A program made the position numbers and the translations under genes. From NCBI RefSeq assembly GCF_033153115.1, contig NW_026889785.1, positions 930,001 through 994,000 of the forward strand: 64,000 nt of DNA, written 5' to 3'. The notes beneath the pieces were generated by a model. It saw nothing but the letters and a program-made list of their open reading frames with translations, was not told where the DNA came from and searched no databases. Positions 48,041 through 62,934 of this stretch are shown here, one piece after another. The stretch is from Saccostrea echinata. Taxonomy: Eukaryota. Position 1 is the first letter of the stretch, and every line of letters begins with the position of its first letter.

Positions 48041-48608
48041 TTTCCATCTCCTTAAAAGTTCCTTTGAGTTTTTAAGTATTAACATCTGATTTAATCCCCT
48101 TTTCGAATATACTGATTAAAATTTAAATTAAATAAAAATGAACAGGGAATCATTGTATTGTTTAAATTAAAATCTGATTTGTAAGTATTCGGCGTTAAAA
48201 GATAAAACGGAATCAAAACACACAATGAAGATTCAGAAAATAAGACACAAATGTTACATTTGAAAATGGTCTCTTTGTTGGTCGTGTAGTTTGCCGTCTA
48301 ATGGAAGCATTTGCCATTTAAGGAAAACTTTAATTTTATATAATCATTTGGACATTTTTTGTGTTACAGCGTATCAATTCTTGCGAGTTAATCTGAATAT
48401 CTTAACCTTTTTATCTGAAAATAATTCTAAGGAGAATAAGTGCAGTCGTTACTTTGTTAACAAAACGGCTTTTATTATTATTTTTTTTTATACCAAATTA
48501 ATTTTGATGGTCTTTATATATTTAAATCCTCCGTTTAAAAACAAGTATAAAACAATTCTATGTATATTGATGTTTTTTTTTTTTAATTTTGTTTACAGTA
48601 TCTGTGTC

Positions 48609-49140
48609 ATGAATCTCCGAAACAGTGATCCTCTCTGTGCCCTGTGTAACGCACCTGCATTACAGAGTTATTGTAGTACTTGTCATATTTATGTATGTAC
48701 CTCCTGTCTACAGTATCATATTTCAAAAACACACAATGTTGTACCATACAAAAAAAGAAATTTTATGCATAAGTACCCAAAATGTCCAAACCACACCAAG
48801 GAACATTGTGAACTTTACTGTGAGAAATGTGACATTCCCGTCTGTTTTAAATGCATCATTCTTGGTAAACATAATGGTCATCACCTCACAAATATTACGC
48901 AAAAACTCAGTTCAACATCAGAAACAATCCCACCTCAAAGGTTTATGGCATATATGAAAAAAGGAAAGACTGCAGTTCGCCACGCTCGAGGAATCGTGGT
49001 AGGATGTGCTGGAGCTGGCAAAACGTCACTTTTATATAGACTATTGGGAAAAAGTCTTGACGAAATAAATAAAATAGAATCGACTAAAGGACTTCATGTC
49101 TACGAACACATTTTTTTGGTAAAAAATGACGAATTGATTG
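48609..49140 (+). CDS. Roco-like B-box-Roc-COR-HEPN-CaaX gene, coding exon 1 (two B-boxes, Roc G1/G2)
   Basis: Acceptor ttacag|48599; ATG at 48609; CALC..YCSTC..VCTSC..H..H and CPNH..LYCEKC..VCFKC..H..H; GCAGAGKTSL; donor g|gtaag. Confidence 0.85.
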
Positions 49141-49213
49141 GTAAGAGTTATTTTATATTTTATTCATTTATCTAAGTTTAACAATGAAATCAATTCTGCC
49201 ACCGGACTTCATG

Positions 49214-49215
<2 letters not shown>

Positions 49216-49291
<76 letters not shown>
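49216..49291. repeat. (TA)n microsatellite
   Basis: Direct observation. Confidence 0.95.
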
Positions 49292-49294
<3 letters not shown>

Positions 49295-51419
49295 CACTAA
49301 AAATGACCAACGACAGGAACAATAGAAATTGTCAAATTTTCGGGACGTCCTGTCCCTTCCTCAGGACAAAGTAAGAAGTTAAGAAGTCATAAAAATAAAA
49401 GAAATAGAAAAACAAAAACGGCTAGTACTACTACTAAACTACCAAATACTATTTATTTACAATGTTACATGTTTATTTGAAGTTTATAATCAGTTGTAAA
49501 GAAAGAAATCCGGACCGCTATGAAATACGTCCGGTCTCTCGGGTGTACTCTGGTAAGGTGCGATTTACTTAATTGAACGAATCAATTATCGCTAATCAAT
49601 TACGGCCAAGCAGTAAATCGTACACTGTCTTATTCTCTCAAAATAGCGTAACTTTACTTGATAAACAGAAACCAAAGAGAAATAATTTAGATGCATTATA
49701 CATGTCATTTGGAAATGTTTTAGGACTGTTTATCGGATAAAAGAAATAATTAACAAAAATGTAAGCAAAAAATCTGTGCGTGGGTTGTTCAAATTCGGAT
49801 AAGTTATCTGGGTAAAATCTAGGAAAAAATTTTTTTTTTTCTTGAGTTGATTTTTTCAAAAATTGAGAATTGTTAATTGAGTTTGATCATGTAACACCTA
49901 TTATAAGTGAATATTGAGAGTTTTTCAACAATTTTTAGCATTTTTAAAAAAGTGAATTCTAAATGTACCCATGGTTTTTAATTACTTAGAGATATATTAT
50001 AAATTGTTTCTTTATAGTAGAGGTGGCAACAATGTGTCATGTTTTTTTGTGAGAATGGTTTGTTTGTTTTTATTGGTCTTTATGGGCTCAATATAAATTC
50101 AAAGTACCTGAAAATCTCAATTTCCCCAATCTTTTCGGCTGTTACCATGGCAACCAAGACACATAGCAAACACATTTTTATGAAATATGTTTATAGTGTC
50201 AAGTTGTAATAATGATAAAACTTTCATCAAAGTTGGAGAAAATGCGTGGCAAAGAAGTTTAAGTATATACCAAGAATAGATCTTTAACTTAAGAAATAAA
50301 TCTGACAATATGAACTTTAGTAGTAAAGGGATGCAAAAAATATTCGGGTAGCCCATCTCTTTCCTATTGACTGTTTTTACGAACTTTGTAGAGCTTAGTG
50401 ATATTTTTTCACATTTTGAAAGAATATAAAAGAGATATTTTGTTGCAGTGTAAAAGAATATCAGAAGTATGGCAAAACTCTCAATTTTCCTTACCTTCCA
50501 AAAAAATGTTGTAAAATTGTAAAACAATACCCACTGGCCTCAGTGAAAGTGGAGAGAAAGTAAAAATCTATAATGACAAGGATTAATCTGCCAAGGTTTC
50601 TCTGTTGTGAAAAAAGACAGAAGTATTTTCCTGTCCGGAAACATTATATTACGCATTGGCATGTGAACATTAACCCCCCCCCCCCCCCTCACACATACAC
50701 AGTAAGTACACCAGAGCCCAGTGATTTTTTAAGAAAGTTTTTTTTATTTAACTAGACATACCATTTATCCAGTACACATGCACTTGCAATATTTCTTGTA
50801 TAAAAATACCAATATGGACCCCACTCACAGTGCTTTTCTCTTAAAAAGATGGATATTTATTGGGTGGCCCTCAGATCTATATCTTTGGCGGCCGCATGAA
50901 ATTTATATGGTCATTAATTGATGTGGCGACCGCCTGATAAGTTTCATGTGACTACTAGAAATATTTATTTTGTGATCGCCAGATGTCTTTATTTGACGAT
51001 AAATTTATCTGGCGGCCGCCAAATAATATTATTTTTATCTGGCACCTACAGGCTTCCGTATAGAATAAACTGGAACACATTGACAATTTCATTACACGGT
51101 TACAGCCTAAAATATTTACCAAAAATATGATGACACATTATTTGCGATAAACAAGGTACATGACGTTTGAGGCCGATTTTTTTTTTTTACATAAAATTTA
51201 CGGACCATTTTTATTATTTTTAGAGCAGGAATCATATACAGAAAATGTATGAATTCTTCGAAACACCTCTTCTCAGCTCCAGGGTATTCACCTAAGAAAG
51301 TTTTAAATGCATGGTTATGACAAACAGGGGTGCCTTTTCTAAAGTTGTTAATTTTCTGGAAACTTGGTTAGGGGTTCTGGTGTGACAGCAGAGCTTAATT
51401 GATCATATAGTGAAAAAAA

Positions 51420-52075
51420 TAAATATGAAGATGTCAAATAGTAATTAGGCTCAAAGTCCATTGGAAGAATACTACATGTTGTAATGCGAGCAGAGCAAAC
51501 ACAGATGTCTCAAAGATCAGAGGATGGATCAGGTGCCATGGAACAGTAAACATCCCTTGTAGACCAGTCACTCAAGCCGTGTGCTAATTGACATGATCAA
51601 GCAAACGGAAAAAATCCGTACAAAAGTCATGGTGAAAAAAATGGCCTCACAATTTGCATAGAAAACGTCATTCAACATTTGACTTAACGATAGATTGTAT
51701 TTGCTTACAAGGTCATTGTATCGACCATGGAATTTTCATTATGTTGACTTTAAACGGGACTGTTGATATCTTTGTATCATCAGCTTACTTAACAATATCT
51801 TGCCTCGTTTAAGTAATTATTCGAATGTAGAGCATGACGTTGCTACATTTATGATGGAAGGTGATAACAGAAAAAGATACAATCATTACGTTTATCATAA
51901 AGATTTGTTGTTAGGTTGCCATTAAAGCCTTTTCCTGTAAAATAACCAATTATTTAACAGATGTGTCGGACTCTATGGTGTCCTTTATTTTGCGTCAAAA
52001 GGATATATTGAATCAACGTACGAATGAGTATGAATATTGTTTATTGATAAAAGGTCGTCAATATTGTTGGAAGAT
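51420..52075 (-). mobile_element. Penelope-like 3' fragment in intron
   Basis: Reverse complement of the RT C-terminus and the conserved 3' motif (gatcaggtgccatgg...). Confidence 0.7.
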
Positions 52076-52493
52076 TTTATCTCCCAAAATTACATATAAA
52101 ATGTATTTTTCTTTTTAAAAAACGTCTTCTCTGTCTATGGGTATTTAGCAGATAAAATGACCGCATGGTTATGATTAGCAAGCATGCATCTTTCAAAATT
52201 CTGAAATTCATAGCCCCTAAGTCAGAGGTTTTTATGTAAGGGAGGGACTCAAAGATATCCGTTAACTATGAAAGAAACAGAACATACTGAAACGAAATGT
52301 TTTTGGAGGTCCGTGTTTGCTCTGCTTTCGATTTGTGTTGTTTAAATGGACTTTGAGCTTGAATACTGTTCGCTATATCCATATTTCACATAAAAATTAT
52401 GACATTGCTGTTCTAGAGAATCCACTTTTAAATAGTTAAGTTTGATATTCAAGTTTGCATTCTTATTTATGTTTTGGCCATGATACATTGTAG

Positions 52494-52889
52494 CATCCAG
52501 TGATAATGCCTTAAACAAACGACTGATCAGAGTCCCATTGTCTGCACTTCAAAAGATCGAGCAAAGTGATGAAAAGGAATCAATGAATAGAAACCATTTT
52601 GAAAGCCCATTGCCAAACACTGCATTGGGTCTGAATGAAAATGATACAGATGATCTACACCTGACACAAGATGAAATGAGAGAAATACTAGATGCAAAGG
52701 AAAATGAAACAAGTGTCAGTATGATTGATTTTGCAGGACAATTTGCTTATTATGCTTGTCATCAGATCTACATGAGATCGGAAGCATTCTACATACTGGT
52801 GATGGATATGAGTAAAGCTTTCCAAGATGCGGTTAATAGTGAAACAAATGAACGCCAGGGTTCTATCTTTTCTACGTGGACTTACAAAG
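52494..52889 (+). CDS. Roco-like gene, coding exon 2 (Roc G3)
   Basis: Acceptor ttgtag|; SMIDFAGQFAYYACHQIYMRSEAFYILVMD; donor g|gtatg; phases 1/1. Confidence 0.9.
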
Positions 52890-52999
52890 GTATGATATTT
52901 ATAAAACAGGATTACCAAATACTCCAAATCTAGACATCATATTCTCTTCAATAAAAGAAGGTCAAACTTGAAGTTCTCTGGCCTTGTTCGACCAAATAG

Positions 53000-53430
53000 G
53001 ATTCGATACGCAAGAGCATGCTCTACGTATAAACAATTTCTAAAACAAGATAAATTATTGACAAACAAGATGATGAAACAAAAATATAAGAAGTCTCGTT
53101 TAAAGACATCATTTCGTTAGTTCTATGGTCGATACAATGACCTTATCAGCAAATACAGTTTATCATCAAGTCAAATGCTGACTGACGTTTTTCATACTAA
53201 TTGTTAGGCCATTTTTACACACTGAATTGTCGACGGATTTTCCCGTTATTTCCCGATCATGACAAGGAGCACACGGCGGGAGTGACCGGTCGGCAGGGGA
53301 TGCTCACTCCTCCATGGCACCTGATCCCACCTCTGATGCTTTGGAGGTCCGTGTTTGCTCTGCTCCTATTTTGTATTGTTTAATGGACTTTTGAGCTTGA
53401 ATACTGTTCGTTATCTCTATATATTTCATT
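53000..53430 (+). mobile_element. Penelope-like 3' fragment (well preserved)
   Basis: Near-identical to the reverse complement of 18885-19305. Confidence 0.85.
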
Positions 53431-53896
53431 CAAAGATTTATAAGAGAAGCATAATTCTCATAAAGAACAAAAAAGGCACCACAAAGCCGACAATTCCTCG
53501 CAAGAGAGTACGATTCCTGTAACGCACATCCCAGTAAATGGACGTTACATTAACCCTCTCACCTACTTCCACGAAAAGACGAAACGAAATTCCCATATCA
53601 AAGGGACTCGAAATTAAAGAAACCACAGAGTCTTCCAAATCTGCTTTTTTTTTTATATTTTACAGAAAATAGATCATAGTGGTCATCTCGCACGTAAACT
53701 GCATGATAAACGATATGACTTCAACTTTTACATGGTCGACTTTCCAACTTCGATATATAGGGTTTACGGCGGGTCAACAGTGACACTTACTCCTCCTAGT
53801 CATTTGATGCCAGCTGTTAAGGTTCCGGGGTCTGTGTTTTATTCCCTGTAAACAAATTTGTTTTGACTTTAAGAATTTTAAAGTCTATGTATGTAT

Positions 53897-56784
53897 GGCC
53901 ACACCAATAACATTTCTTGTTCTTTCGACAACTGACCCCCCTAAAATTGGGGAGAGCAAGCGATTTGATAATCATAATATTAATATTTTTTATCAACATA
54001 ATTTCCAGGCGAAGAAGTCAAATAACGAAGCGAGCAATTGTATATTTTTTTTGTTTTCCTTTACATTTCTAGAGTAAATCATTATGAAGTCTTTTCCAAG
54101 TCCCCTGATCATATAAGCCATTCAATATTCTATACTTATGCATAAATAAAACAGTCATAACAATATTGTTGCTATGGTTTCTCACTTTAATTACATAATG
54201 ACTTTCCTCAATATGTACAAAAACAATTAAAAAAAATATATATATTATATTCATTCGTTTACATGTTTAGAACATTATAGGACATTTGATACAGGTTCTT
54301 TAAATGTTTTCATAAAGGTACAAAATTCTGTACATAAATCTACTGATGATATAAGACATTAACTCTCCTATGCACATCAAACCTTTGGTCCATGTTTTTG
54401 CCCTGTTCATAATTGGAATTACATTAAACTACATTTATGAGATTTATCACTGTTTGTTACCTTCATTTGAAAACTGTATTCACAAAATGTGATGTGAACA
54501 GACTATATATACAATCATATAAAAACTGGCCAATTCAAGCAGCACTATTATTATTATTATTACTCTGTATTTATGCACAATATCAGAAGCCATTGTCCCA
54601 AATTTTAATTCACATAATAAAAAAAGGCACAGTAGAACCGTCAACAAGTATGTGTCACTACTATTTATCATTTACAATTAATGCCAGCAGTGATAAGTTA
54701 TTATTACATATAGTAGGTCACAAATATATATATTAAAATATAATAAACACTGAGCTCAGAATAACAAGGTTGAACATCAGTTATAAAATGAAAAAATATT
54801 ATTAAAACCAAAACTAGTTTTTTTTTCTCAAGAGTTGGCTGATATATATTTAGAAATAAAGTGTCAAAGTTGTTTAAATTTTATGGGAAGCTACTTCGAC
54901 GAATCAAGGAAGATAGATACTTTGATTTCTTCTGGCTGATCCACGACAGCTTGGAATAAGTACATGTAAAAAAGGAATCTGTTAAAGAATTGTCTGAGGT
55001 GGATACCAATTACCGGTATTCTATGGCATTATGGAAATATTATCTACCTTCAGTTTGCATGCACTGTGGTTCAGCTGAAGATCTTCTTGAATGGTGTCTG
55101 CACTATATGAACAGTTCTCAGTTGTGAGTCAGAGTCCAGTTTATTTTCACTGTAGAAATTCAGGAAATACCACCAAATCTTGCTGGAGCTAGGGCTTCAA
55201 CACTCAATATCCAAAGGAAATAAATGAAGTAGCTTAGAAGTCTACCTAAAATAAAATAGATGCAGCTTAATAAAATTGTTTAATACATGGTTATTCAGGG
55301 AAAAAAAATGTATATATGCATTTTTTTCTAGTCTTAATTCCTTACACTTACGTCTAGGCATCTCCACAATTTGATTTATGTCCATGGTGTTTTTATCTGC
55401 CTAAACATAACAGATCTGCTCTTTCCAATCCTCACTGTTCACCACGATGGAGGTATTAATTTAACTTGTTTCCTTTGCCGTAACTCTAAGAAGCACCACA
55501 GGAGTTCGCAATTTTATCAATAAAGTCAATAAAAATCACTCGATTGACCAAGCCATGAGCCATGCGTTAGCATAGCGAACAGGAATGCAACGCGTTTTGG
55601 GAGAAATTTACCAATTTGCTTTTATCCACCGCTTATTCAATACAACTTGTTAGCATTCATGTCAAACAACATTTCTCTGCTAAAATTTGTTCTCTAACCC
55701 TTCTCGAATGCTGTCAATACCCACTTTCTTCGATTTCGCGTAAACATTCGTTTTACCGAGAAGCCATTGCGTGATGTCACATCAAACCCGAACCTGACAG
55801 ATAATTATTAAATTAAAAAAAAAGATAGCGAATGAACTTTAAATTATTTCCTGTTGCTTTATATTATCTCCTACTTACCAAATTGTACCAGCAAAGTTGT
55901 TGGACACGACGAATTTTCCATTTTCCTTACTCAATATTTCAATTTGCGCGCACATACAACTGAAATTATCGCCCTTTGTTTTTGAACAGCTCGACATGGT
56001 TTCTCGTCACAAAAAAATATAATCGGGGGATATTAAGCATTATGATTTATTCAATTTATTTATAAAATAAAATATGTACAATAATTGACAACGTGTTTAT
56101 TCATTTTTTTTATTTAAAACAATCGAATAATATATTTGTCGGGTCCGGGTTTGATGTGACGTCACGCAATGGCTTCTCGGTAAAACGAATGTTTACGCGA
56201 AATCGAAGAAAGTAGGTATTGACAGCATTCGAGAAGGGTTAGAAAGCAAATTTTAGTAGAGAAATGTTGTTTGATACGAATGCTGACAAGCTGTATTGAA
56301 TAAGCGGTGGATAAAAGCAAATTGGTAAATTTCTCCAAAAACGCGTTGCATTCCTGTTTGCTATGCTAACGCATAGCTCATGGCTTGGTCAATTGAGTGA
56401 TTTTTATTGACTTTATTGATAAAATTGCGAACTCCTGTGGAAGCACGCTTAAAACAGTTTGTGCAACTGTGTGTGCCTCATTGGAGTTAATGACCGTGTT
56501 TTTTTTTACGACAGATACCGTCAAATTAGCTCAATAGTCAATGCATGTAACTGTCCAGAGTGTCAAATGTCCTTTCTCATGCAAATTGATCAATGTTGTC
56601 TCAGTTTTGCCGACGCGTAAAATTTACTACTTATTACCGAGCATTAAAAATAAAACAAAAAAATGGGGCGGGAAATGGAACAAAAATTTCCGGAAGCAGG
56701 AAATTTAATATAATATTATTTTTTACGTTTCTTTAAAATACGAGCGCGCGGGTCCGACGTACAAGAAATTTTATTAATGTGGCC
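53897..56784. mobile_element. Possible DNA transposon (GGCC-terminated, Zator-like) hosting the foldback element
   Basis: ggccacaccaataa ... ttattaatgtggcc imperfect TIRs; appears to interrupt a Penelope 3' tail. Confidence 0.4.
55497..56439. mobile_element. Foldback element with ~305-bp TIRs and 7-bp TSD (P-superfamily/Galileo-like)
   Basis: gaagcac|cacaggagttcgcaat... and ...attgcgaactcctgtg|gaagcac; arms ~55497-55802 and ~56134-56439. Confidence 0.85.
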
Positions 56785-57287
56785 TTTGTTTCATTTACCT
56801 TTTTATTCATACAAAATCTGCTTAACCTTCATCACAATATTACTTACGAAAACAATGTTCCAATCCGCTTGAAGTTACTCTTACATGTAAAATTCGCACC
56901 ATTATGAAGAAAAAAAAATTATTTATACTAAATAAAAGAAAACTAAATGAGAAAGCATGAGTTCAATAGGTACTCAAGTTATATAAACTTGTATTACCTT
57001 GGTCAGAACGGTTAGGCTTTTTAATTAACTATTTTGCGACTTATAAAGAATAAAATGCAATAACTCCCTTTATTCAATATAACATGAGCTGCAATTTTCA
57101 TTCCTTGATATAAAGTTTGCATTACAATTGCTGTGATAAATGATTTAAAATGAAAGTTTACATAAGGGATTTATTTTTGGTCCAGGTAATTATCATGGTC
57201 CATCGATCTCGTATGTCCATTTTCTACGTTTGTGTTTATTAATAATAATTGAAATGAATTATATTTATTACTGCAATTTGTTACTAG

Positions 57288-57385
57288 ATTATCTTTACTT
57301 CTGGCTTGACTCCATAAAATCGTTTAGTGGAACTTCTGCACAAATTCTTGTGGTGGCTACGCATGCAGAAGGCAAGACAGATGAG
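57288..57385 (+). CDS. Roco-like gene, coding exon 3 (Roc G4)
   Basis: Acceptor tactag|; DYLYFWLDSI...ILVVATHAE; donor |gtattt; phases 1/0. Confidence 0.85.
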
Positions 57386-57487
57386 GTATTTGACATACGT
57401 TTTATGACAGATTCCTAATGAGTAAACTGTTGTAAAGCTCCAATATAATGCACCAAAATATCATTCAATAAATAACCTGCTTTTATA

Positions 57488-58750
57488 TACTAGCGAAAAA
57501 AAAGAAACTGCACAATACTTAAAGTATAAAATATAAGAATTAAATATTAACGACTATAGATTTAAATCAGTAGCATGATTTAAAATGCATTGTTTACAAA
57601 TATGTGGGATTAATTTGTGTTAACGTCATAAAACATCACTTGTAGGACGGTAGAAAGACACATTTACTTGAAAGGCGATTCACAAACTTAATACCGCGTA
57701 TGGCCACCATTTGAATTCACGCATGTTTAACACAGGCGTCTCATTGATGATACTTAATTATCTAAAAATTCCTGGGGAATGTTGTTCCAGACATTGGTCA
57801 ATTCCTGGCCTAAATCGTCCAATGGTTTAGTTAATAACGTAACCGTCTTTTCAATTCATTGCATGTGTTCAATTGGCGATACGTCGGGCGAAACTGCTGG
57901 GTAATAACATCTCTGACAACACGGGCAATGCGGTCTGACGTTATGCTGTTGCAATGTAATTGGATTTTGTTGTCATTACGCTATAACCTTCAAATTGTCG
58001 ACGTTGCAGTACACACGCATCCAAGTAACTCTCCCCATTCCGAAGATAAAACCTGTCACTGCTGTCCAAATGAAATCTTGATTCATCAGTGAGCAAAAAA
58101 TAGGCCCATTCTTAAAATCGGTATCTTAGATGTCTCTGACACCATCTTGTGACGTTGAAGTAGTATTGGACGTATCGGAGGACGTCTATGTCTTACGTTA
58201 TACTCACACAAGTGATTATTTTTAGTTCTTGTACTTAAACCGGGGATGCTACGAGCAGTCAAACTTGCTGTCTGAAAATGATTTTGCAGATGCATGCTAT
58301 GGTTATCTTTGCGAACCTACGACTCATGGGGGCGTCCTGAACGTTATCGATCCAAAGCGTAGCCGCATTGTTTGAACCGTCTCCATAATGTCAGGTTAAT
58401 GTTTCTGACACCAAATTGTCGTGCAACAACGTTTTTGGCCATCCAAGCCTGCAACATTCCAGCAACATAAAGATATTGATTTTCATTTAGACTAAGCAGA
58501 TTTATAGATCCTGATAATACCAAAGTGAATTTGTCTCATACAAACATCATTTACCTGAGATACCATGCGAGTACGATTCATTCAAAAACCAACATGTGGT
58601 TGCCCACCATGTAAAATCCGTCCAATAGTCCAAGCCTATTGTCATTAATATCACTACATCTATCGAATATTAACCGCTCATAAATATAAACAATATGCTT
58701 TGAGTCCTATCTTATATATACTAATGCAGTTTCTTTTTTTTTCGTTAGTA
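57488..58750 (-). mobile_element. Degenerate Tc1 transposon
   Basis: TIRs tactagcgaaaaaaaagaaactgca / tgcagtttcttttttttt cgttagta flanked by TA; minus-strand remnants VVARQFGV, RSGRP, DESRF, WNNIPQ and GGHTRY. Confidence 0.85.
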
Positions 58751-59132
58751 TATTTATTATCTTTCAATGTTGGGGTTGGAGTTAAAATAAGAATAATGTG
58801 AGTAAAATTTGCTTTATTATTTTCATTGAACCGTTTGAAGCACAATAATACAACTTACAATTTTTTTAAAAAATCTTAGTGACTTATACATTGCATGCGT
58901 TTACTCCTCAAAACTATTAATTTCCGGATTTTTTGAAGACGTGTTATTTGCCTAGATTACTATGGCACGACAAGTCAAGGAAAGCCTTGCAACGTTATAA
59001 TAAATAAAGTTTTTGATGTTTCTTGTCGGTATTTTTCAGGAAATTCAGAGCTTATTTTGATGATGAACACAATTGTGACCTTGTTTTTATTTTACTTTTT
59101 GTACACCTAGTCGTTATAAATTTTCAAAATAG

Positions 59133-60302
59133 GAAAAGGACTCTTTCTGGGAGAGTCTTTGGACGTTATTACCAGAGTATGATAAGACGAGGATTTACGA
59201 CAGTGACTTTGCATTAGGACTACTGGAGATGAATGAACAAGGGAGGCATGCTCTGGAGAGTCTAAAAACATCAATAGCAGACGTAGTATCGCAAATCATG
59301 GACACAGGGATAGAAGTTCCCTCAGCTTGGGCTCTTCTTGAGCATCTCTTGAAAAAAACAGAAAAACCTATCTTGTCAATCAGTGACATCAACGAAGAGA
59401 ATAAGAAACTTCCTGAAGAATACCAATTGAAAAGTCAAGAAGAAATATATGATTTTCTGTCCTTTTTCCATAGTCATGGAGTGTTACTATTTTTTATGGA
59501 GGAAGGACTGAAAACACACGCAATTCTCGGTATACAATGGTTTTCCGATGCATTCAGTAAACTTATTGCCGACAAGAGCCACATAAATAGAGACTGTCAA
59601 CGACGACATATCAAGGAATGGGACTATTTTAATGCCACGGGAAATCTGAAGAATTCACTTGTAGATGCTCTTTGGAAAAAGGAACAATCTTATTTGGAAC
59701 ACAAGACTGAGCTTATGGCATATATGGAGAGACTACGAATGTTAGTCAACATTGGTGAGTCAGAAGGCGAAATATCTTGGTATGTTCCTTGCATGAACAA
59801 TAAGCGTTTTACACGGGATGTTTGTAGATGGGAAAGGAAATACTCGTCAATTTTGAGTTTTCGGTTCATATCCTTTGCCATGTTCGTGTATTACAGACTT
59901 ATTGCATATTGCATGAGTTTCCTCAAGTGGAATGTGCAGTTGGATAAAGAAAACAGCCTATGTCTTTATCACACAGCAGCAATTTTTGAAACCCAAAATC
60001 ACACAGTTATCGTTGGTATAATTGATAATGACCTCCAGATTCAAGTCCTCCGAATCAAGAATCTGAATCCCAAAGTTTCATGTGAAATTGGAAAAACAAT
60101 CGAATTTGCCTTAACAGAATTGACGAAGACATTTGATGAGAAGAAGTCCTTCGTAAAAGGTTACAAATGTTTGAATCTGTTCTGTAGTGAAGATGATATG
60201 TCATTTATTCCAGAAAATAAACTGTCTGGGGTCCAATGCAACTGTCCAATTGAGGAAAAACATGAAATGGATGTACAATGGACGCTCTATTTTTGGATGG
60301 AG
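59133..60302 (+). CDS. Roco-like gene, coding exon 4 (end of Roc plus COR)
   Basis: Acceptor aaatag|; EVPSAWALLE, FLSFFHSHGVLLFF, IQWFSDAF, WYVPCM and VYYRLI are COR-like motifs; donor |gtgcgt; phases 0/0. Confidence 0.85.
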
Positions 60303-60512
60303 GTGCGTACCATGTTTTTGTTTTTAAACCAAAGCAAAAATAATAGAAAAATCTGTAAGTCTCTCCTTTGGACTTACTTTGACACGAAGTGATACGTCAT
60401 GGCCACGATTTAAGGGTTTTTGTAAAACTTTTTTTTTAATTTAAAGCTTTTATGTGTGCTTTTCTTTTGTAGTATATATATGTTGTATTTAGAACAAAAA
60501 TATTTCAAATTC

Positions 60513-60646
60513 NNNNNNNNNNNNNNNNNNNNNNNNNNNNNNNNNNNNNNNNNNNNNNNNNNNNNNNNNNNNNNNNNNNNNNNNNNNNNNNNNNNNNNNN
60601 NNNNNNNNNNNNNNNNNNNNNNNNNNNNNNNNNNNNNNNNNNNNNN
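60513..60646. other. Assembly gap (N run) inside intron 4
   Basis: Run of n. Confidence 1.
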
Positions 60647-61721
60647 AAAAACTTCACTGGGAAATGGGTTGGTACATGATCAAAACTTCGGAGGTCTGAG
60701 GTCTTCACAGGATTTGTTCACGAGACCAACCCACTTCATTTCCCAGTAAAGTTTAAAAACTTGTTATCTATTTCTAAAATAAACTTGGTAAATATAATAC
60801 ATATCACAAATAGGTTTCCAGTGCTCTTCATAATCTAAAAATATAAAATTTCTTAATATTGTCCCCACAATATTATCTAGCATTGAGATGCTTAGTTTAG
60901 GCACATTTTTAACCTTCTAACAAAAATTAATTGTTTAACAGTAAATATTAATATATTCTGTAGCTTAAACATGTTTTTATTGTTGAGTTTGCCAAAAAGG
61001 ATATCTTTTCTATCAAAATTCATGGAAAAATGAAATTTATTAATAAACCACTTCTCAAGATGACACCATATTTTTTTTTACATGGACACATTCGAAAAAT
61101 AAATGTTCAATTGTTTTAACATGTTGCAAAAGGAGCATGCAGGTGTTTCAATTAGTTTAAGTTTATCTGGTGCAATAATCCTGTGCAAAAAATGAATCTG
61201 CAACCAGTGAAACTTTGCTTCTTTACTTACTTTAAAAGTAAGTTCAAGTATTTTGTTCCATTCTATATCCCAAAAAATATTCCATTATTTTTCCTTTTTT
61301 CCATTGCCTTAATTGTTTATATTTTTCTTCTTCCTAATGAGAATACTGTACATATTTATACAGCGTTTGTTGCTTTTGTAAAAAAAATTATATAATGGGA
61401 TTTAGGGATGAATGGTTAATTTTCTTCTCTTTTTTTCAATTTTTGTACTTTTCAATATTTTTAAAACATCTACTTTTAAACCCGTATATTCTACAAAATT
61501 TGTTTTTACATTTAGATTTGTGAGGTATTCAAGGTTTACAATTTTTTTAAACTTTGATTGCCATTTTTTTTAGTTAAGATAATAAATAATCGGTCTATAG
61601 TCATCTTGGAAATACAATTTTAAGTATATGAAAATTAAAAGAAAATTGACACATCGCAATTTGCAAGCCCACCCCTTTAAGAATATAATAGTCGTTTACT
61701 AATGAACAACTATATTTTCAG

Positions 61722-62424
61722 GATATTGTTTGCGACAAGAATCCAAAGTCGTTTGGAAGAAATCTTGACGGTCGTACTAGATTTGCAAAACTTGGAATGG
61801 CAATAAATGATGTGTTAACTCAGACATATAGAGACATTTTAGAGAAAGAGATTCCCTCTTCTCAGATAATGGGTAAAGTGGAATTAACAAAAAGATATAA
61901 AAACCTCCACTGTGAACAACAAAATCTTTTGAAGGACGCCAAAAACTCTGGTTATAAAAAATTTGATATAACTCTTCTCTATACTCTGATGAGAAACTTT
62001 TCTACAACAACCCCGAGGCCAACACATGGTTGGGGTTTAAAGGCCCCACCTGCAGCAGGGGAGATAACTGTGGGGGATGACATTGAAAGGATCCGACTGA
62101 TTCGAAACAAAGTGTATGGTCACGTTAATTCAGCTTCAGTCTCACAAGCAGAATTTGATGATAACTGGTCAATCATCTCTGATATCTGCAAACGACTTGA
62201 AACATATACTGGAAAAAGCTACTCAAATGAACTTGATAACATTAAGAAACTTTCCTTGGGAGAAGATAGCCGAGAGGCAATTATAGAAAAAATTAAAGTA
62301 AACAAAGAAATACTCGATAAAATGCAGTCAATGGAAACTGGTATACAGTCTATACAGATAGATGCAAACTTAATAAAAGCAGATTTGCAAGAAATAAAAT
62401 TAGCTGTGACTTGTGAGAGGAAAG
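61722..62424 (+). CDS. Roco-like gene, coding exon 5 (DZIP3/hRUL138-like HEPN plus coiled coil)
   Basis: Acceptor tttcag|; FDITLLYTLMRN...PTHGWG...VGDDIERIRLIRNKVYGH; heptad-like tail; donor g|gtaac; phases 0/1. Confidence 0.85.
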
Positions 62425-62890
62425 GTAACCATATATTTTCATGTATCTGTGAAAATTTGCTAGTAGTAAAACATTAAGGTACTGAAAAAAGAATATTTTA
62501 GCAAAATATATTAGGGGGGACCAATCCACTGATATGAGTTAAATTAAAAACATTGACTTTTATGTACTTTTGCCTGTATTTTTCAAATTATATACAAGAT
62601 TGGATTGTTGACTTAGGACAAATATAACTTTTGCATGACTTGTCAAAGGTTCAACAGGTATGTTGTCAATCACCCCTCCCCCCAATGAAAAGGAGGGTTT
62701 GTTTGTTGTCATCCTTGTAGTAACGTTTCATAATGTTGTCAAATATAATGAAAATACATTTAAAAGAAGTAAACATTTTGATATACCTGGATTAAGATCA
62801 CCCTTATGAAATGAAGAATATCACAAAATTTAATACTACGCTTATGAGAAGAGATGAAATTATCATTGCTTCCCTGTCTTATTTTTTCAG

Positions 62891-62934
62891 ATGAAGAGGA
62901 GTCTTGTTGGCCAAGAAGGTGTGGAATCTTGTAA
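62891..62934 (+). CDS. Roco-like gene, terminal coding exon ending in CaaX (CGIL)
   Basis: Polypyrimidine acceptor attttttcag|; phase-1 join gives DEEESCWPRRCGIL*. Confidence 0.7.

What the first reader, a model, noticed from the sequence alone, without database searches (positions are those of the whole stretch)
48609..62934. Candidate new system: B-box - Roc - COR - HEPN RNase - CaaX protein (~980 aa)
Seen: six exons (48609-49140, 52494-52889, 57288-57385, 59133-60302, 61722-62424, 62891-62934) join by GT-AG with matching phases 1,1,0,0,1 into 2943 nt with no internal stop. Motifs are two B-boxes, Roc G1 GCAGAGKT, G3 DFAGQ, G4 THAE, a COR region, a DZIP3-like HEPN with R-x5-H, a coiled coil and CGIL*. 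Known: Roc-COR modules (LRRK2, DAPK1, MFHAS1) are nucleotide-regulated dimerisation switches, and HEPN RNases (RNase L, Cas13, Csm6) need two HEPN domains to form an active site. Inferred: a GTP-gated, membrane-anchored ribonuclease, conceptually like an RNase L-type antiviral or cell-death effector built from different parts. I do not recognise this architecture among characterised proteins; it lacks the LRR, kinase and death domains of known Rocos.
Basis: partly seen in the sequence, partly recalled or inferred. Interest (0 to 1): 0.9.

Follow-up and report, generated by a model that had tools for sequence, protein, structure and literature searches.

The report
Oyster Roc-COR GTPase fused to HEPN RNase
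This is a real rock-oyster gene that joins two B-box zinc fingers, a LRRK2-type GTPase switch, a predicted HEPN ribonuclease and a lipid-anchor signal, but it is one member of a large bivalve gene family that public annotation already holds as unnamed proteins, not a one-off new system.

Summary
All six exons, their GT-AG borders, the phases 1,1,0,0,1 and the open frames are as described. Pfam finds two B-boxes, Roc, COR-A and a DZIP3-type HEPN on separate exons.

The assembly gap at 60513-60646 lies inside intron 4, so reading frame is not at issue there.

The genome is Saccostrea echinata. It starts at a different small first exon (51484-51532) and so lacks the B-boxes and the P-loop.

The genome holds at least 36 loci with a COR exon followed by a HEPN exon. 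Relatives carry a trypsin-like protease or a Death domain in the HEPN position. The GTPase and HEPN catalytic motifs are conserved across the family.

The most likely function is a nucleotide-switched, dimerising RNase effector of innate immunity or cell death, geranylgeranylated in this small subclade. This is inferred, not shown. No RNA evidence could be obtained.

I rate it a new variant of a known kind. A word search of the scan's earlier notes found no record of this family on other DNA.

The parts
48609..49140 (+). Exon 1: B-box 1 (about 48633-48725), B-box 2 (about 48771-48893) and the Roc P-loop GCAGAGKT (49002-49025), all in one open frame. A strong pyrimidine tract and AG end at 48598, 11 nt before the ATG.
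   Evidence: All Zn ligands are conserved against S. cucullata XP_062584881.1. Only this locus and its twin on C5 match over residues 1-177.
51484..51532 (+). Alternative first coding exon used by RefSeq XP_061170565.1: ATG plus 16 codons plus 1 nt, donor GT at 51533, phase 1. It gives an 819-aa isoform without B-boxes and without the P-loop.
52494..52889 (+). Exon 2: a variable insert, then Roc switch II / G3 DFAGQ (52727-52741).
   Evidence: D78 is invariant in 154 relatives.
57288..57385 (+). Exon 3: Roc G4 THAE (57359-57370).
   Evidence: T and H are near-invariant; E in 91 and D in 12 of 103 rows.
59133..60302 (+). Exon 4: end of Roc, COR-A (about 59319-59765) and COR-B (about 59766-60302).
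   Evidence: COR-A, 49.5 bits; the AF2 model matches the C. tepidum Roco COR domain 3dpt at E 2.5e-11, then LRRK1 and LRRK2; the profile hits 3dpu at E 8e-4.
60513..60646 (.). Assembly gap (N), inside intron 4 (60303-61721).
   Evidence: Continuity across it is argued. Its letters were not looked up anywhere.
61722..62424 (+). Exon 5: DZIP3-type HEPN domain (about 61896-62270) with R-N-x4-H at 62103-62123, then a 53-residue helix (about 62262-62420).
62891..62934 (+). Exon 6: terminal mini-exon ending in CGIL (62920-62931) and TAA. This is a CaaX box of the geranylgeranyl type.
   Evidence: RefSeq uses the same exon; homologous mini-exons ending in CRIL in the two closest paralogs; CKIL in S. 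cucullata.

Best explanation
The locus is an intact six-exon gene of the rock oyster Saccostrea echinata. It belongs to a large bivalve-specific family of ROCO proteins (Roc GTPase plus COR-A/COR-B) whose C-terminal position holds an exchangeable effector. The effector is most often a DZIP3-type HEPN domain, and in relatives a trypsin-like protease or a Death domain.

This gene has two extra parts. One is an N-terminal B-box pair, most similar to the very large B-box/NHL gene family, fused in the same exon to the P-loop. The other is a terminal mini-exon with a C-x-I-L prenylation box.

Most likely mechanism (inferred). The Roc-COR module acts as a nucleotide-dependent switch of oligomeric state. 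That switch controls whether two HEPN domains pair to form the composite R-N-x4-H RNase site, cutting cellular or viral RNA in an immune or cell-death response. The geranylgeranyl tail and basic residues place it on a membrane. The B-boxes add self-association or recognition.

Shown: gene structure, domains, folds, motif conservation, family size, effector exchange, a predicted HEPN homodimer. Inferred: GTP dependence and its direction, RNase activity, prenylation, the immune role.
For: Gene model
- Searches confirm the exons, frames and domains.
- XP_061170565.1 matches exons 2-6 at 99.7-100% with exactly one junction residue at the two phase-1 junctions.
- S. cucullata XP_062584881.1 (64% identity) has B-box x2, Roc, COR-A and HEPN_DZIP3, ends CKIL, and aligns across the 1-2 junction with no missing exon.

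Family
- The genome holds at least 150 HEPN exons and at least 110 COR exons.
- 36 of 68 listed COR exons are followed on the same strand by a HEPN exon (median spacing 1.27 kb). None has one on the opposite strand.
- 58 of 213 fetched COR proteins carry HEPN, 55 of them C-terminal.
- Effector exchange: HEPN, Trypsin_2 or Death in the same position.

Motif conservation
- HEPN R and N are present in 55 of 55 relatives. H is at x5 in 42 and at x4 in 13.
- G1 GxxxxGKT and G3 D are invariant. G4 is TH-x-E.

Folds
- COR model against C. tepidum Roco 3dpt, E 2.5e-11.
- HEPN model pLDDT 93.3. Its top VIA hit is the Csm6 HEPN at Z 8.3, rmsd 3.2 A, 112 aligned. Other HEPN proteins (AbiF, Swt1, sacsin, Cas13) are also among the listed hits.

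Homodimer
- ipSAE 0.37 against a best control of 0.00. The mark was reached by 21 of 30 proteins solved as pairs of one chain and by 0 of 23 solved as single chains.
- The runs agree in at least 86% of contacts. Partner pLDDT is at least 77.
- The interface includes residues 123-142 around the catalytic helix.

CaaX
- C-x-I-L is conserved in the two closest paralogs and in S. cucullata.

Published concept
- NTPase plus HEPN as an RNase-L-like defence or apoptosis device: PMC3710099.
- Oyster HEPN expansions: PMC9646362.
Against:
- The only RefSeq model of this gene starts at another exon and lacks the P-loop, so the main product may have no working GTPase.
- No DZIP3-family HEPN has a demonstrated RNase activity in the papers I read. 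Human DZIP3 is known as an RNA-binding ubiquitin ligase (my own knowledge).
- G4 has Glu where guanine-specific GTPases have Asp, so the nucleotide may not be GTP.
- In the C. tepidum Roco protein, GTP binding favours monomers (PMC5714945, PMC11052575), so 'GTP switches the RNase on' does not follow.
- The HEPN fold match (Z 8.3) is below the level the tool regards as safe for helical bundles.
- The dimer score is a model's confidence and may reflect memory of solved HEPN dimers.
- No obvious sensor domain (LRR, WD40, TPR) is present.
Confidence: 0.6

Rival explanations
1. The HEPN domain is not a nuclease here. It is an RNA- or nucleotide-binding or scaffolding module, as proposed for sacsin and as DZIP3 is usually described. 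On this reading the protein is a signalling adaptor or sensor, not an RNA-cutting effector.
For: - No DZIP3-family HEPN RNase activity was reported in the papers read.
- Recent work reports RNA binding for the isolated sacsin HEPN domain (PMC13669270, seen).
- Relatives put a Death domain, an adaptor, in the same position.
Against: - R128 and N129 are invariant in 55 of 55 relatives, and His is kept at x4 or x5 in all of them. That is the pattern of catalytically active HEPN families (PMC3710099).
- A trypsin-like protease, an enzyme, also occupies the same position.
- The predicted dimer places the motif helices at the interface.
Confidence: 0.2
2. The product actually made is the RefSeq-type 819-aa isoform, started at 51484 and lacking the B-boxes and P-loop. 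Exon 1 would then be unused or belong to a rare isoform, so the protein is not nucleotide-gated and the B-box fusion is not functional.
For: - XP_061170565.1 uses the first exon at 51484-51532.
- No protein model containing exon 1 of this species was found.
- The window's own copy on C36 has no separate protein in the database.
Against: - Exon 1 is open and in the right phase.
- It carries the only G1 motif of a Roc domain whose G3 and G4 lie in exons 2 and 3.
- All B-box Zn ligands and the P-loop are conserved with S. cucullata XP_062584881.1 and XP_062583390.1, which keep the same fused exon.
- Five S. cucullata and S. echinata models splice the P-loop exon to the exon-2 equivalent at the same residue.
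- A strong acceptor sits 11 nt before the ATG.
Confidence: 0.15
3. The locus is a recently duplicated, decaying copy, or an assembly artefact across the gap: exons from two genes placed side by side.
For: - There is an N gap in intron 4.
- A near-identical copy exists on contig C5.
- Some close paralogs have stops in their COR exon.
Against: - There is no stop or frameshift in any of the six exons.
- The exon 4 to exon 5 spacing is 1419 nt here and 1421 nt on C5.
- Orthologue and paralogue proteins align across the junction with no missing residues.
- 36 loci show the same order and strand.
Confidence: 0.05

Closest known systems
RefSeq XP_061170565.1, uncharacterized protein LOC133179905 (Saccostrea echinata)
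   Same: It is the same gene, read from the near-identical copy on the 18.6-Mb contig C5. Exons 2-6 and all four junctions are identical, and it ends in CGIL. There is one amino-acid difference (M/K at exon-4 residue 389).
   Different: It starts at the small exon 51484-51532 instead of exon 1, so it has no B-boxes and no P-loop. It is unnamed and unstudied.
RefSeq XP_062584881.1, uncharacterized protein LOC134246510 (Saccostrea cucullata), 1164 aa
   Same: It has the same full architecture: two B-boxes, Roc, COR-A, HEPN_DZIP3, a basic tail and a C-x-I-L end. It is 64% identical over 93% of the 819-aa model.
   Different: It has about 165 extra residues in the variable insert between G1 and G3. 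Its CaaX is CKIL.
NACHT/Death/TRADD-N proteins with DZIP3-type HEPN in oysters and cnidarians (PMC3710099, PMC9646362, PMC8195603)
   Same: They share the same HEPN family, lineage-specific expansion, and an NTPase or adaptor module coupled to a HEPN effector. An antiviral or apoptotic role has been proposed for them.
   Different: Their switch is a STAND ATPase (NACHT), usually with HEPN at the N-terminus and repeats at the C-terminus. Here the switch is a Roc-COR GTPase with HEPN at the C-terminus and no repeat sensor.
ROCO proteins: LRRK1/2, DAPK1, MFHAS1, C. tepidum Roco
   Same: They share the Roc-COR-A-COR-B tandem. The fold match to 3dpt, LRRK1 and LRRK2 is clear, and G4 begins TH as in LRRK2.
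   Different: This gene has no LRR, ankyrin, kinase or death domain. Its output domain is a HEPN. Its G4 ends in Glu. It has a long insert between G1 and G3.
RNase L / Ire1 (KEN-type HEPN)
   Same: The working logic is similar: a HEPN RNase whose activity depends on ligand-driven dimerisation of a neighbouring regulatory module.
   Different: They belong to a different HEPN family, and their regulator is a (pseudo)kinase with ankyrin or lumenal sensors. This is not a homologous architecture.
Bacterial AP-GTPase (Roc-COR) conflict systems with variable C-terminal effectors (PMC8195603)
   Same: Both have a Roc-COR core with an exchangeable effector position.
   Different: The bacterial proteins carry N-terminal LRRs. 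The HEPN version in animals was not described in the papers I could read.

Membership tests
ROCO (Roc-COR) GTPases | Ras-like Roc domain with G1, G3 and G4 motifs | tested here: met
   Pfam Roc scores 30.4 bits against a cut-off of 27 on exon 2. G1 is GCAGAGKT, G3 is DFAGQ and G4 is THAE. All three are conserved in 103-154 relatives. G4 has Glu instead of Asp.
ROCO (Roc-COR) GTPases | COR domain (COR-A plus COR-B) directly after Roc | tested here: met
   COR-A scores 49.5 bits against 35.3. The AF2 model matches the C. tepidum Roco COR domain 3dpt_A at E 2.5e-11 over 312 columns, then LRRK1 and LRRK2. The profile hits 3dpu at E 8e-4. COR-B is also suggested by features, score 0.94.
ROCO (Roc-COR) GTPases | Guanine-nucleotide binding and hydrolysis; nucleotide-dependent dimer-monomer cycle | not testable with these tools
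   This needs biochemistry.
HEPN superfamily, DZIP3/hRUL138-like family (PF18738) | Profile match above the curated threshold | tested here: met
   81.8 bits against 27, E 5.5e-23.
HEPN superfamily, DZIP3/hRUL138-like family (PF18738) | R-x4-6-H motif with a polar residue after the Arg | tested here: met
   R128-N129-x4-H134. R and N are present in 55 of 55 relatives; H is at x5 in 42 and at x4 in 13. The motif is nearly invariant in 31 paralog exons.
HEPN superfamily, DZIP3/hRUL138-like family (PF18738) | Four-helix up-down HEPN fold | tested here: inconclusive
   The model is confident (pLDDT 93.3). Foldseek finds nothing. The top VIA hit is the Csm6 HEPN at Z 8.3, rmsd 3.2 A, 112 aligned. 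AbiF, Swt1, AF_0298, sacsin and Cas13 are also listed. However, Z lies below the tool's caution level for helical bundles.
HEPN superfamily, DZIP3/hRUL138-like family (PF18738) | Dimerisation that brings two motifs together; RNase activity | tested here: inconclusive
   The predicted homodimer passes: 0.37 against a best control of 0.00. The mark was reached by 21 of 30 solved pairs of one chain and 0 of 23 single chains. Contacts agree in at least 86% of runs, and pLDDT is at least 77. The interface includes residues 123-142. Activity is not testable here.
TRIM / tripartite-motif proteins | RING, then B-box(es), then a coiled coil directly after | tested here: not met
   Two B-boxes are present, but there is no RING and the P-loop follows directly. 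This gene is therefore not a TRIM. Its B-box pair is up to 59% identical to RING-less B-box/NHL genes of this genome.
CaaX-prenylated proteins (GGTase-I substrates) | C-terminal Cys-aliphatic-aliphatic-Leu/Phe | tested here: met
   This gene ends in CGIL. The two closest paralogs have CRIL and S. cucullata has CKIL. Only 2 of 52 annotated C-terminal-HEPN relatives end this way, so the feature is subclade-specific. Lipidation itself is not testable here.
RNase L / Ire1 | Kinase or pseudokinase domain followed by a KEN-type HEPN | tested here: not met
   No kinase domain is found on any exon, and the HEPN family is DZIP3, not KEN. The likeness is in working logic only.
NLR / STAND receptors | NACHT or NB-ARC ATPase with a repeat sensor | tested here: not met
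   Pfam finds neither.

The most novel reading that the evidence does not exclude
In bivalves, ROCO GTPases have taken on the role that NLR/STAND ATPases play elsewhere. They would form an expanded family of intracellular immune switches that release exchangeable effectors (HEPN RNase, serine protease, Death domain). This gene would be a membrane-tethered, B-box-assembling version that cuts RNA at membranes, for example at viral replication sites. It would be the first animal RNase controlled by a Roc-COR GTPase.
Probability: 0.25. Interest if true: 0.75.

Novelty: new variant of a known kind. Interest (0 to 1): 0.5.

Why it matters
ROCO proteins are studied almost wholly through LRRK2 and its kinase output, and what the Roc-COR switch is for remains debated. 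This family is a natural experiment. The same switch is wired to at least three different outputs (RNase, protease, Death domain) in dozens of copies. That argues Roc-COR is a general controller of effector assembly.

The family also offers small, kinase-free proteins in which nucleotide-dependent dimerisation could be read out as RNA cleavage.

For bivalve immunity, it adds a large, so far undescribed class to the repertoire of expanded HEPN genes. Bivalves lack adaptive immunity and suffer viral mass mortalities.

The single gene on its own is an ordinary member of that family. Its unusual features are the captured B-box pair and the conserved prenylation exon.

Tried and rejected
RNA evidence

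Joined protein
All searches were done exon by exon, by reference.

Gap
- I did not read or count the letters opposite the gap in the second copy. Locus L001 was fetched automatically and was never opened.
- Continuity was argued from coordinates and protein alignments only.

Searches that found nothing
- Single-sequence PDB searches with exons 4 and 5.
- The HEPN profile against the PDB gave only chance-level rows.
- Foldseek with the HEPN model.

Literature
- One search ('HEPN' plus 'Roc') was swamped by 'rocuronium' and ROC curves.
- Only five papers hold both 'ROCO' and 'HEPN' (four were listed), and of the three I read (PMC8195603, PMC9334734, PMC7159879) none describes the fusion in animals; the fourth listed paper, on bacterial resistance to phage, I judged from its title and abstract only and did not open.

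Ideas rejected
- That an exon is hidden in intron 1 or in the gap. Relatives align across both junctions with at most 1-2 extra residues. The 165 extra residues of the S. cucullata protein lie inside the exon-2 variable insert.
- That the gene is a TRIM, because it has no RING.

Full report
**1. Observation**

I read all six proposed exons and their borders.
- The ATG is at 48609-48611.
- Every donor is GT and every acceptor AG at the stated positions.
- The lengths (532, 396, 98, 1170, 703, 44 nt) give phases 1,1,0,0,1.
- The stop is TAA at 62932-62934.
- Each exon translates without a stop in its frame.
- By arithmetic the product is 980 aa.

Everything below was done exon by exon, by reference.

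Pfam on the separate exons gives:
- zf-B_box, two stretches, E 6.8e-14, plus weak Roc/Arf P-loop matches on exon 1;
- Roc on exon 2 (30.4 bits, cut-off 27);
- COR-A on exon 4 (49.5 bits, cut-off 35.3);
- HEPN_DZIP3 on exon 5 (81.8 bits, cut-off 27).

**2. The gap**

The N run at 60513-60646 lies within intron 4 (60303-61721). It is 210 nt after the donor and 1075 nt before the acceptor. Frame is therefore not at issue; the question is whether the two sides belong together. Four lines of evidence say they do.

(a) Second copy. The genome (923 Mb, window = contig C36:930001-994000) holds a near-identical second copy on contig C5. There exon 4 and exon 5 lie 1421 nt apart, against 1419 nt here. 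I compared coordinates only. I did not open the letters opposite the gap.

(b) RefSeq model. Protein XP_061170565.1 (P0155) runs from the last residue of exon 4 straight into the first residue of exon 5 (residues 571 and 572).

(c) Relatives. The S. cucullata relative P0154 and the S. echinata paralog P0156 align across this junction with only 1-2 extra residues. No exon is therefore hidden in the gap.

(d) Paralogous loci. Of 68 listed COR exons in this genome, 36 are followed on the same strand by a HEPN exon, with a median spacing of 1.27 kb. None has a HEPN exon nearby on the opposite strand.

**3. What the gene is**

The closest database proteins are all from rock oysters.

P0155 = XP_061170565.1, 'uncharacterized protein LOC133179905 [Saccostrea echinata]', 819 aa.
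- It matches exon 2 (100%), exon 3 (100%), exon 4 (389 of 390 residues), exon 5 (100%) and exon 6 (100%).
- It has exactly one residue (Asp) at each of the two phase-1 junctions.
- Its contig length (18,600,107) is that of C5. C36 is 11,009,474 bp.

So the genome is S. echinata.

The first 16 residues of that model come from a small exon at 51484-51532 (ATG, donor GT at 51533, phase 1). The RefSeq protein therefore lacks both B-boxes and the P-loop.

No protein containing exon 1 of this species, and no separate protein for the C36 copy, is in the collection.

**4. Is exon 1 part of the gene?**

I think so, at about 0.75, for these reasons.
- The B-boxes and the P-loop are in one uninterrupted frame of one exon, so that fusion does not depend on splicing.
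- The Roc domain's G3 and G4 are in exons 2 and 3, and its only G1 is in exon 1.
- A long pyrimidine tract and an AG end 11 nt before the ATG.
- S. cucullata XP_062584881.1 (P0154, 1164 aa) aligns to exon 1 over residues 1-177 with every Zn ligand and the P-loop conserved (52% identity). It then continues directly into the exon-2 equivalent.
- Pfam reads P0154 as B-box x2, Roc, COR-A, HEPN_DZIP3.
- Five further models (P0002, P0151, P0001, P0156, P0152) start at the Met equivalent to residue 113 of exon 1. They join the P-loop exon to the exon-2 equivalent at the same residue.

What remains open is which first exon is used, and how often. Only RNA can settle that, and I could not obtain it.

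**5. The family**

Size in this genome.
- A six-frame search finds at least 150 DZIP3-type HEPN exons and at least 110 COR exons.
- They form clusters on contigs C29, C46 and C51.

Architectures among fetched proteins.
- Of 213 proteins with a COR match, 58 carry this HEPN: 55 after COR and 3 before Roc.
- Relatives place other domains in the HEPN position. Trypsin_2 occurs in P0004, P0152, P0158, P0159 and P0172. Death occurs in P0014, P0016, P0017 and P0160.
- N-termini also vary: B-box, NHL or a second HEPN.

The upstream neighbour.
- It is XP_061191668.1, LOC133199866, with the architecture HEPN-Roc-COR-Trypsin_2.
- Its last exon lies in the window at 2699-3361.

Range outside Saccostrea.
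- The Roc-COR-HEPN order is found in unionid mussels (Potamilus, Sinanodonta), and a COR-plus-HEPN fragment in Ostrea edulis.

**6. Two features special to this gene**

The B-box pair.
- Only this locus and its twin match exon 1 over its whole length.
- Other hits are either P-loop exons of paralogs starting near residue 93-105, or B-box pairs (up to 59% identical) at the start of single-exon genes of about 570 aa.
- One such gene reads as B-box x2 plus NHL repeats. More than 1000 candidates were found in the first look.
- The B-box pair therefore looks captured from that family.

The CaaX exon.
- Among 52 annotated relatives with a C-terminal HEPN, only this gene (CGIL) and P0154 (CKIL) end in a CaaX box.
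- A scan downstream of the ten closest paralogous HEPN exons found homologous mini-exons behind strong pyrimidine tracts in the two closest paralogs.
- One of these encodes a peptide clearly related to exon 6 and ends in CRIL. The other is basic and also ends in CRIL.
- C-x-I-L with upstream basic residues is thus conserved in a small subclade. By general knowledge, a C-terminal Leu directs geranylgeranylation by GGTase-I.

**7. Motifs and folds**

Motif conservation across relatives.
- G1 Gly, Gly, Lys and Thr are invariant or nearly so.
- The G3 Asp is invariant, and the Gln after DxxG is present in 148 of 154.
- G4 is Thr-His-x-Glu (Glu 91, Asp 12 of 103). The Glu is a family trait, not a lesion. 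It leaves the base specificity open.
- In the HEPN domain, R128 and N129 are present in 55 of 55 relatives. His is at x5 in 42 and at x4 in 13. An E-R-I-R stretch before the motif is also invariant.

COR (exon 4).
- The AlphaFold2 model (pLDDT 81.5; the first 58 residues are poorly predicted) matches the COR domain of C. tepidum Roco (3dpt_A, E 2.5e-11, 312 columns), then LRRK1 and LRRK2.
- A profile of 21 paralogs hits 3dpu at E 8e-4.

HEPN (exon 5).
- The model is confident (pLDDT 93.3) and ends in a single 53-residue helix, residues 181-233.
- Foldseek finds nothing.
- The exhaustive aligner puts Csm6 of S. mutans first (Z 8.3, rmsd 3.2 A, 112 aligned). It also lists AbiF, Swt1, AF_0298, another Csm6, sacsin, Cas13 and HepS among the rows at Z 5-6.5.
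- This is consistent with HEPN, but it lies below the tool's own caution level for helical bundles.

Homodimer.
- Two copies of residues 15-190 passed the test: ipSAE 0.37 against a best control of 0.00.
- The mark was reached by 21 of 30 proteins solved as pairs of one chain and by 0 of 23 solved as single chains.
- The runs agree in at least 86% of contacts, and partner pLDDT is at least 77.
- The symmetric interface includes residues 123-124, 127, 131, 134-135 and 137-142, that is, the catalytic helix and the loop after it.
- This supports the canonical arrangement but does not show it, and it may reflect memory of solved HEPN dimers.

**8. How it most likely works**

Shown: a ROCO core with intact nucleotide-binding motifs; a HEPN domain with intact catalytic residues under long-term constraint; a C-terminal helix; a conserved prenylation box; and exchange of the effector among paralogs.

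Inferred from established knowledge of the two families:
- Roc-COR proteins cycle between monomer and COR-mediated dimer with the nucleotide state (PMC5714945, PMC11052575).
- HEPN RNases need two domains to build the active site (PMC3710099).
- Coupling the two would give an RNase whose assembly is set by the nucleotide state.

In the bacterial Roco protein GTP favours the monomer, so I do not commit to 'GTP on'.

The case for an immune or cell-death role is circumstantial:
- the exchangeable effector position (RNase, protease, Death);
- the copy number and the tandem clusters;
- published readings of oyster HEPN expansions (PMC9646362) and of NTPase-HEPN fusions (PMC3710099).

No sensor domain is evident. 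The variable insert between G1 and G3, or the B-boxes, are candidates.

**9. Comparison and novelty**

- The gene is a member of the ROCO family and of the DZIP3-type HEPN family. Both membership tests are met.
- It is not a TRIM (no RING). It is not an NLR. It is not a relative of RNase L, which it resembles only in logic.
- The papers I could search describe DZIP3-HEPN fused to NACHT, Death, CARD, TPR, LRR, RING and TRADD-N.
- They describe ROCO fused to TIR or Death in Aplysia, and bacterial Roc-COR with many effectors.
- None of the papers I read describes Roc-COR-HEPN in animals.
- Dozens of such proteins already sit in RefSeq as 'uncharacterized' or are mislabelled 'kinase pats1/roco5'.

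I therefore rate it a new variant of a known kind, of moderate interest. The interest lies more in the family than in the single gene.

**10. Limits**

- No expression data could be obtained.
- No joined-protein analyses were done.
- The gap's letters were not looked up.
- A word search of the scan's earlier notes found nothing on this family elsewhere. The near-place notes on the CaaX exon and the HEPN motif agree with what I found.

Noticed in passing
window 2699-3361 (+), also 1756-2091 (+): The last exon of the upstream neighbour lies here. That gene is XP_061191668.1, LOC133199866, with the architecture HEPN-Roc-COR-Trypsin_2; its trypsin-like protease end matches 2699-3358 at 100%. A 70%-identical second copy of part of the protease region lies at 1756-2091. 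The neighbour's COR exon is just outside the window, at C36:924730-925890.
   Followed up: partly
window 48609-62934 versus G000:C5:68604-82422: The whole gene exists twice in the assembly, on contigs C36 and C5, with matching exon spacing and one amino-acid difference. Several neighbouring paralogs are duplicated in the same way. This may be a retained haplotig or a very recent segmental duplication. Only the C5 copy has a RefSeq protein.
   Followed up: partly
window about 31484-38078 (-): An LTR-retrotransposon-type element carries gag (Retrotrans_gag, zinc knuckle), reverse transcriptase and integrase. These are split over several ORFs, so it is probably degenerate. I describe it only.
   Followed up: partly
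G000:C13:3234300-3236700 (L033) and more than 1000 first-look candidates genome-wide: There is a very large family of single-exon genes of about 570 aa with two B-boxes and NHL repeats and no RING. Their B-box pairs are up to 59% identical to exon 1 of this gene. They are the likely source of the captured B-box module.
   Followed up: partly
window 48570-48572: An in-frame ATG lies 13 codons upstream of the proposed start, inside the pyrimidine tract before the AG at 48597-48598. It would be used only if exon 1 is a first exon and not preceded by a 5' UTR exon. The frame stays open upstream to about 48291 in this copy.
   Followed up: no
window 4054-4674 (+): An open frame is made of about three and a half tandem copies of a unit of roughly 60 aa. 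It has no Pfam match.
   Followed up: no
L003:2734 and L004:3025 (paralogs at C5:497507 and C32:4844986): Unannotated candidate terminal mini-exons ending in CRIL lie behind strong pyrimidine tracts. The RefSeq model that appears to correspond to the first paralog (P0156) ends differently, so the annotation may miss the prenylated end there.
   Followed up: partly
P0024 (Logan assembly, 3026-nt contig): A 487-aa open frame from an unnamed public run carries COR and HEPN in one uninterrupted frame. It may be a transcript-derived contig showing co-transcription in some bivalve.
   Followed up: no
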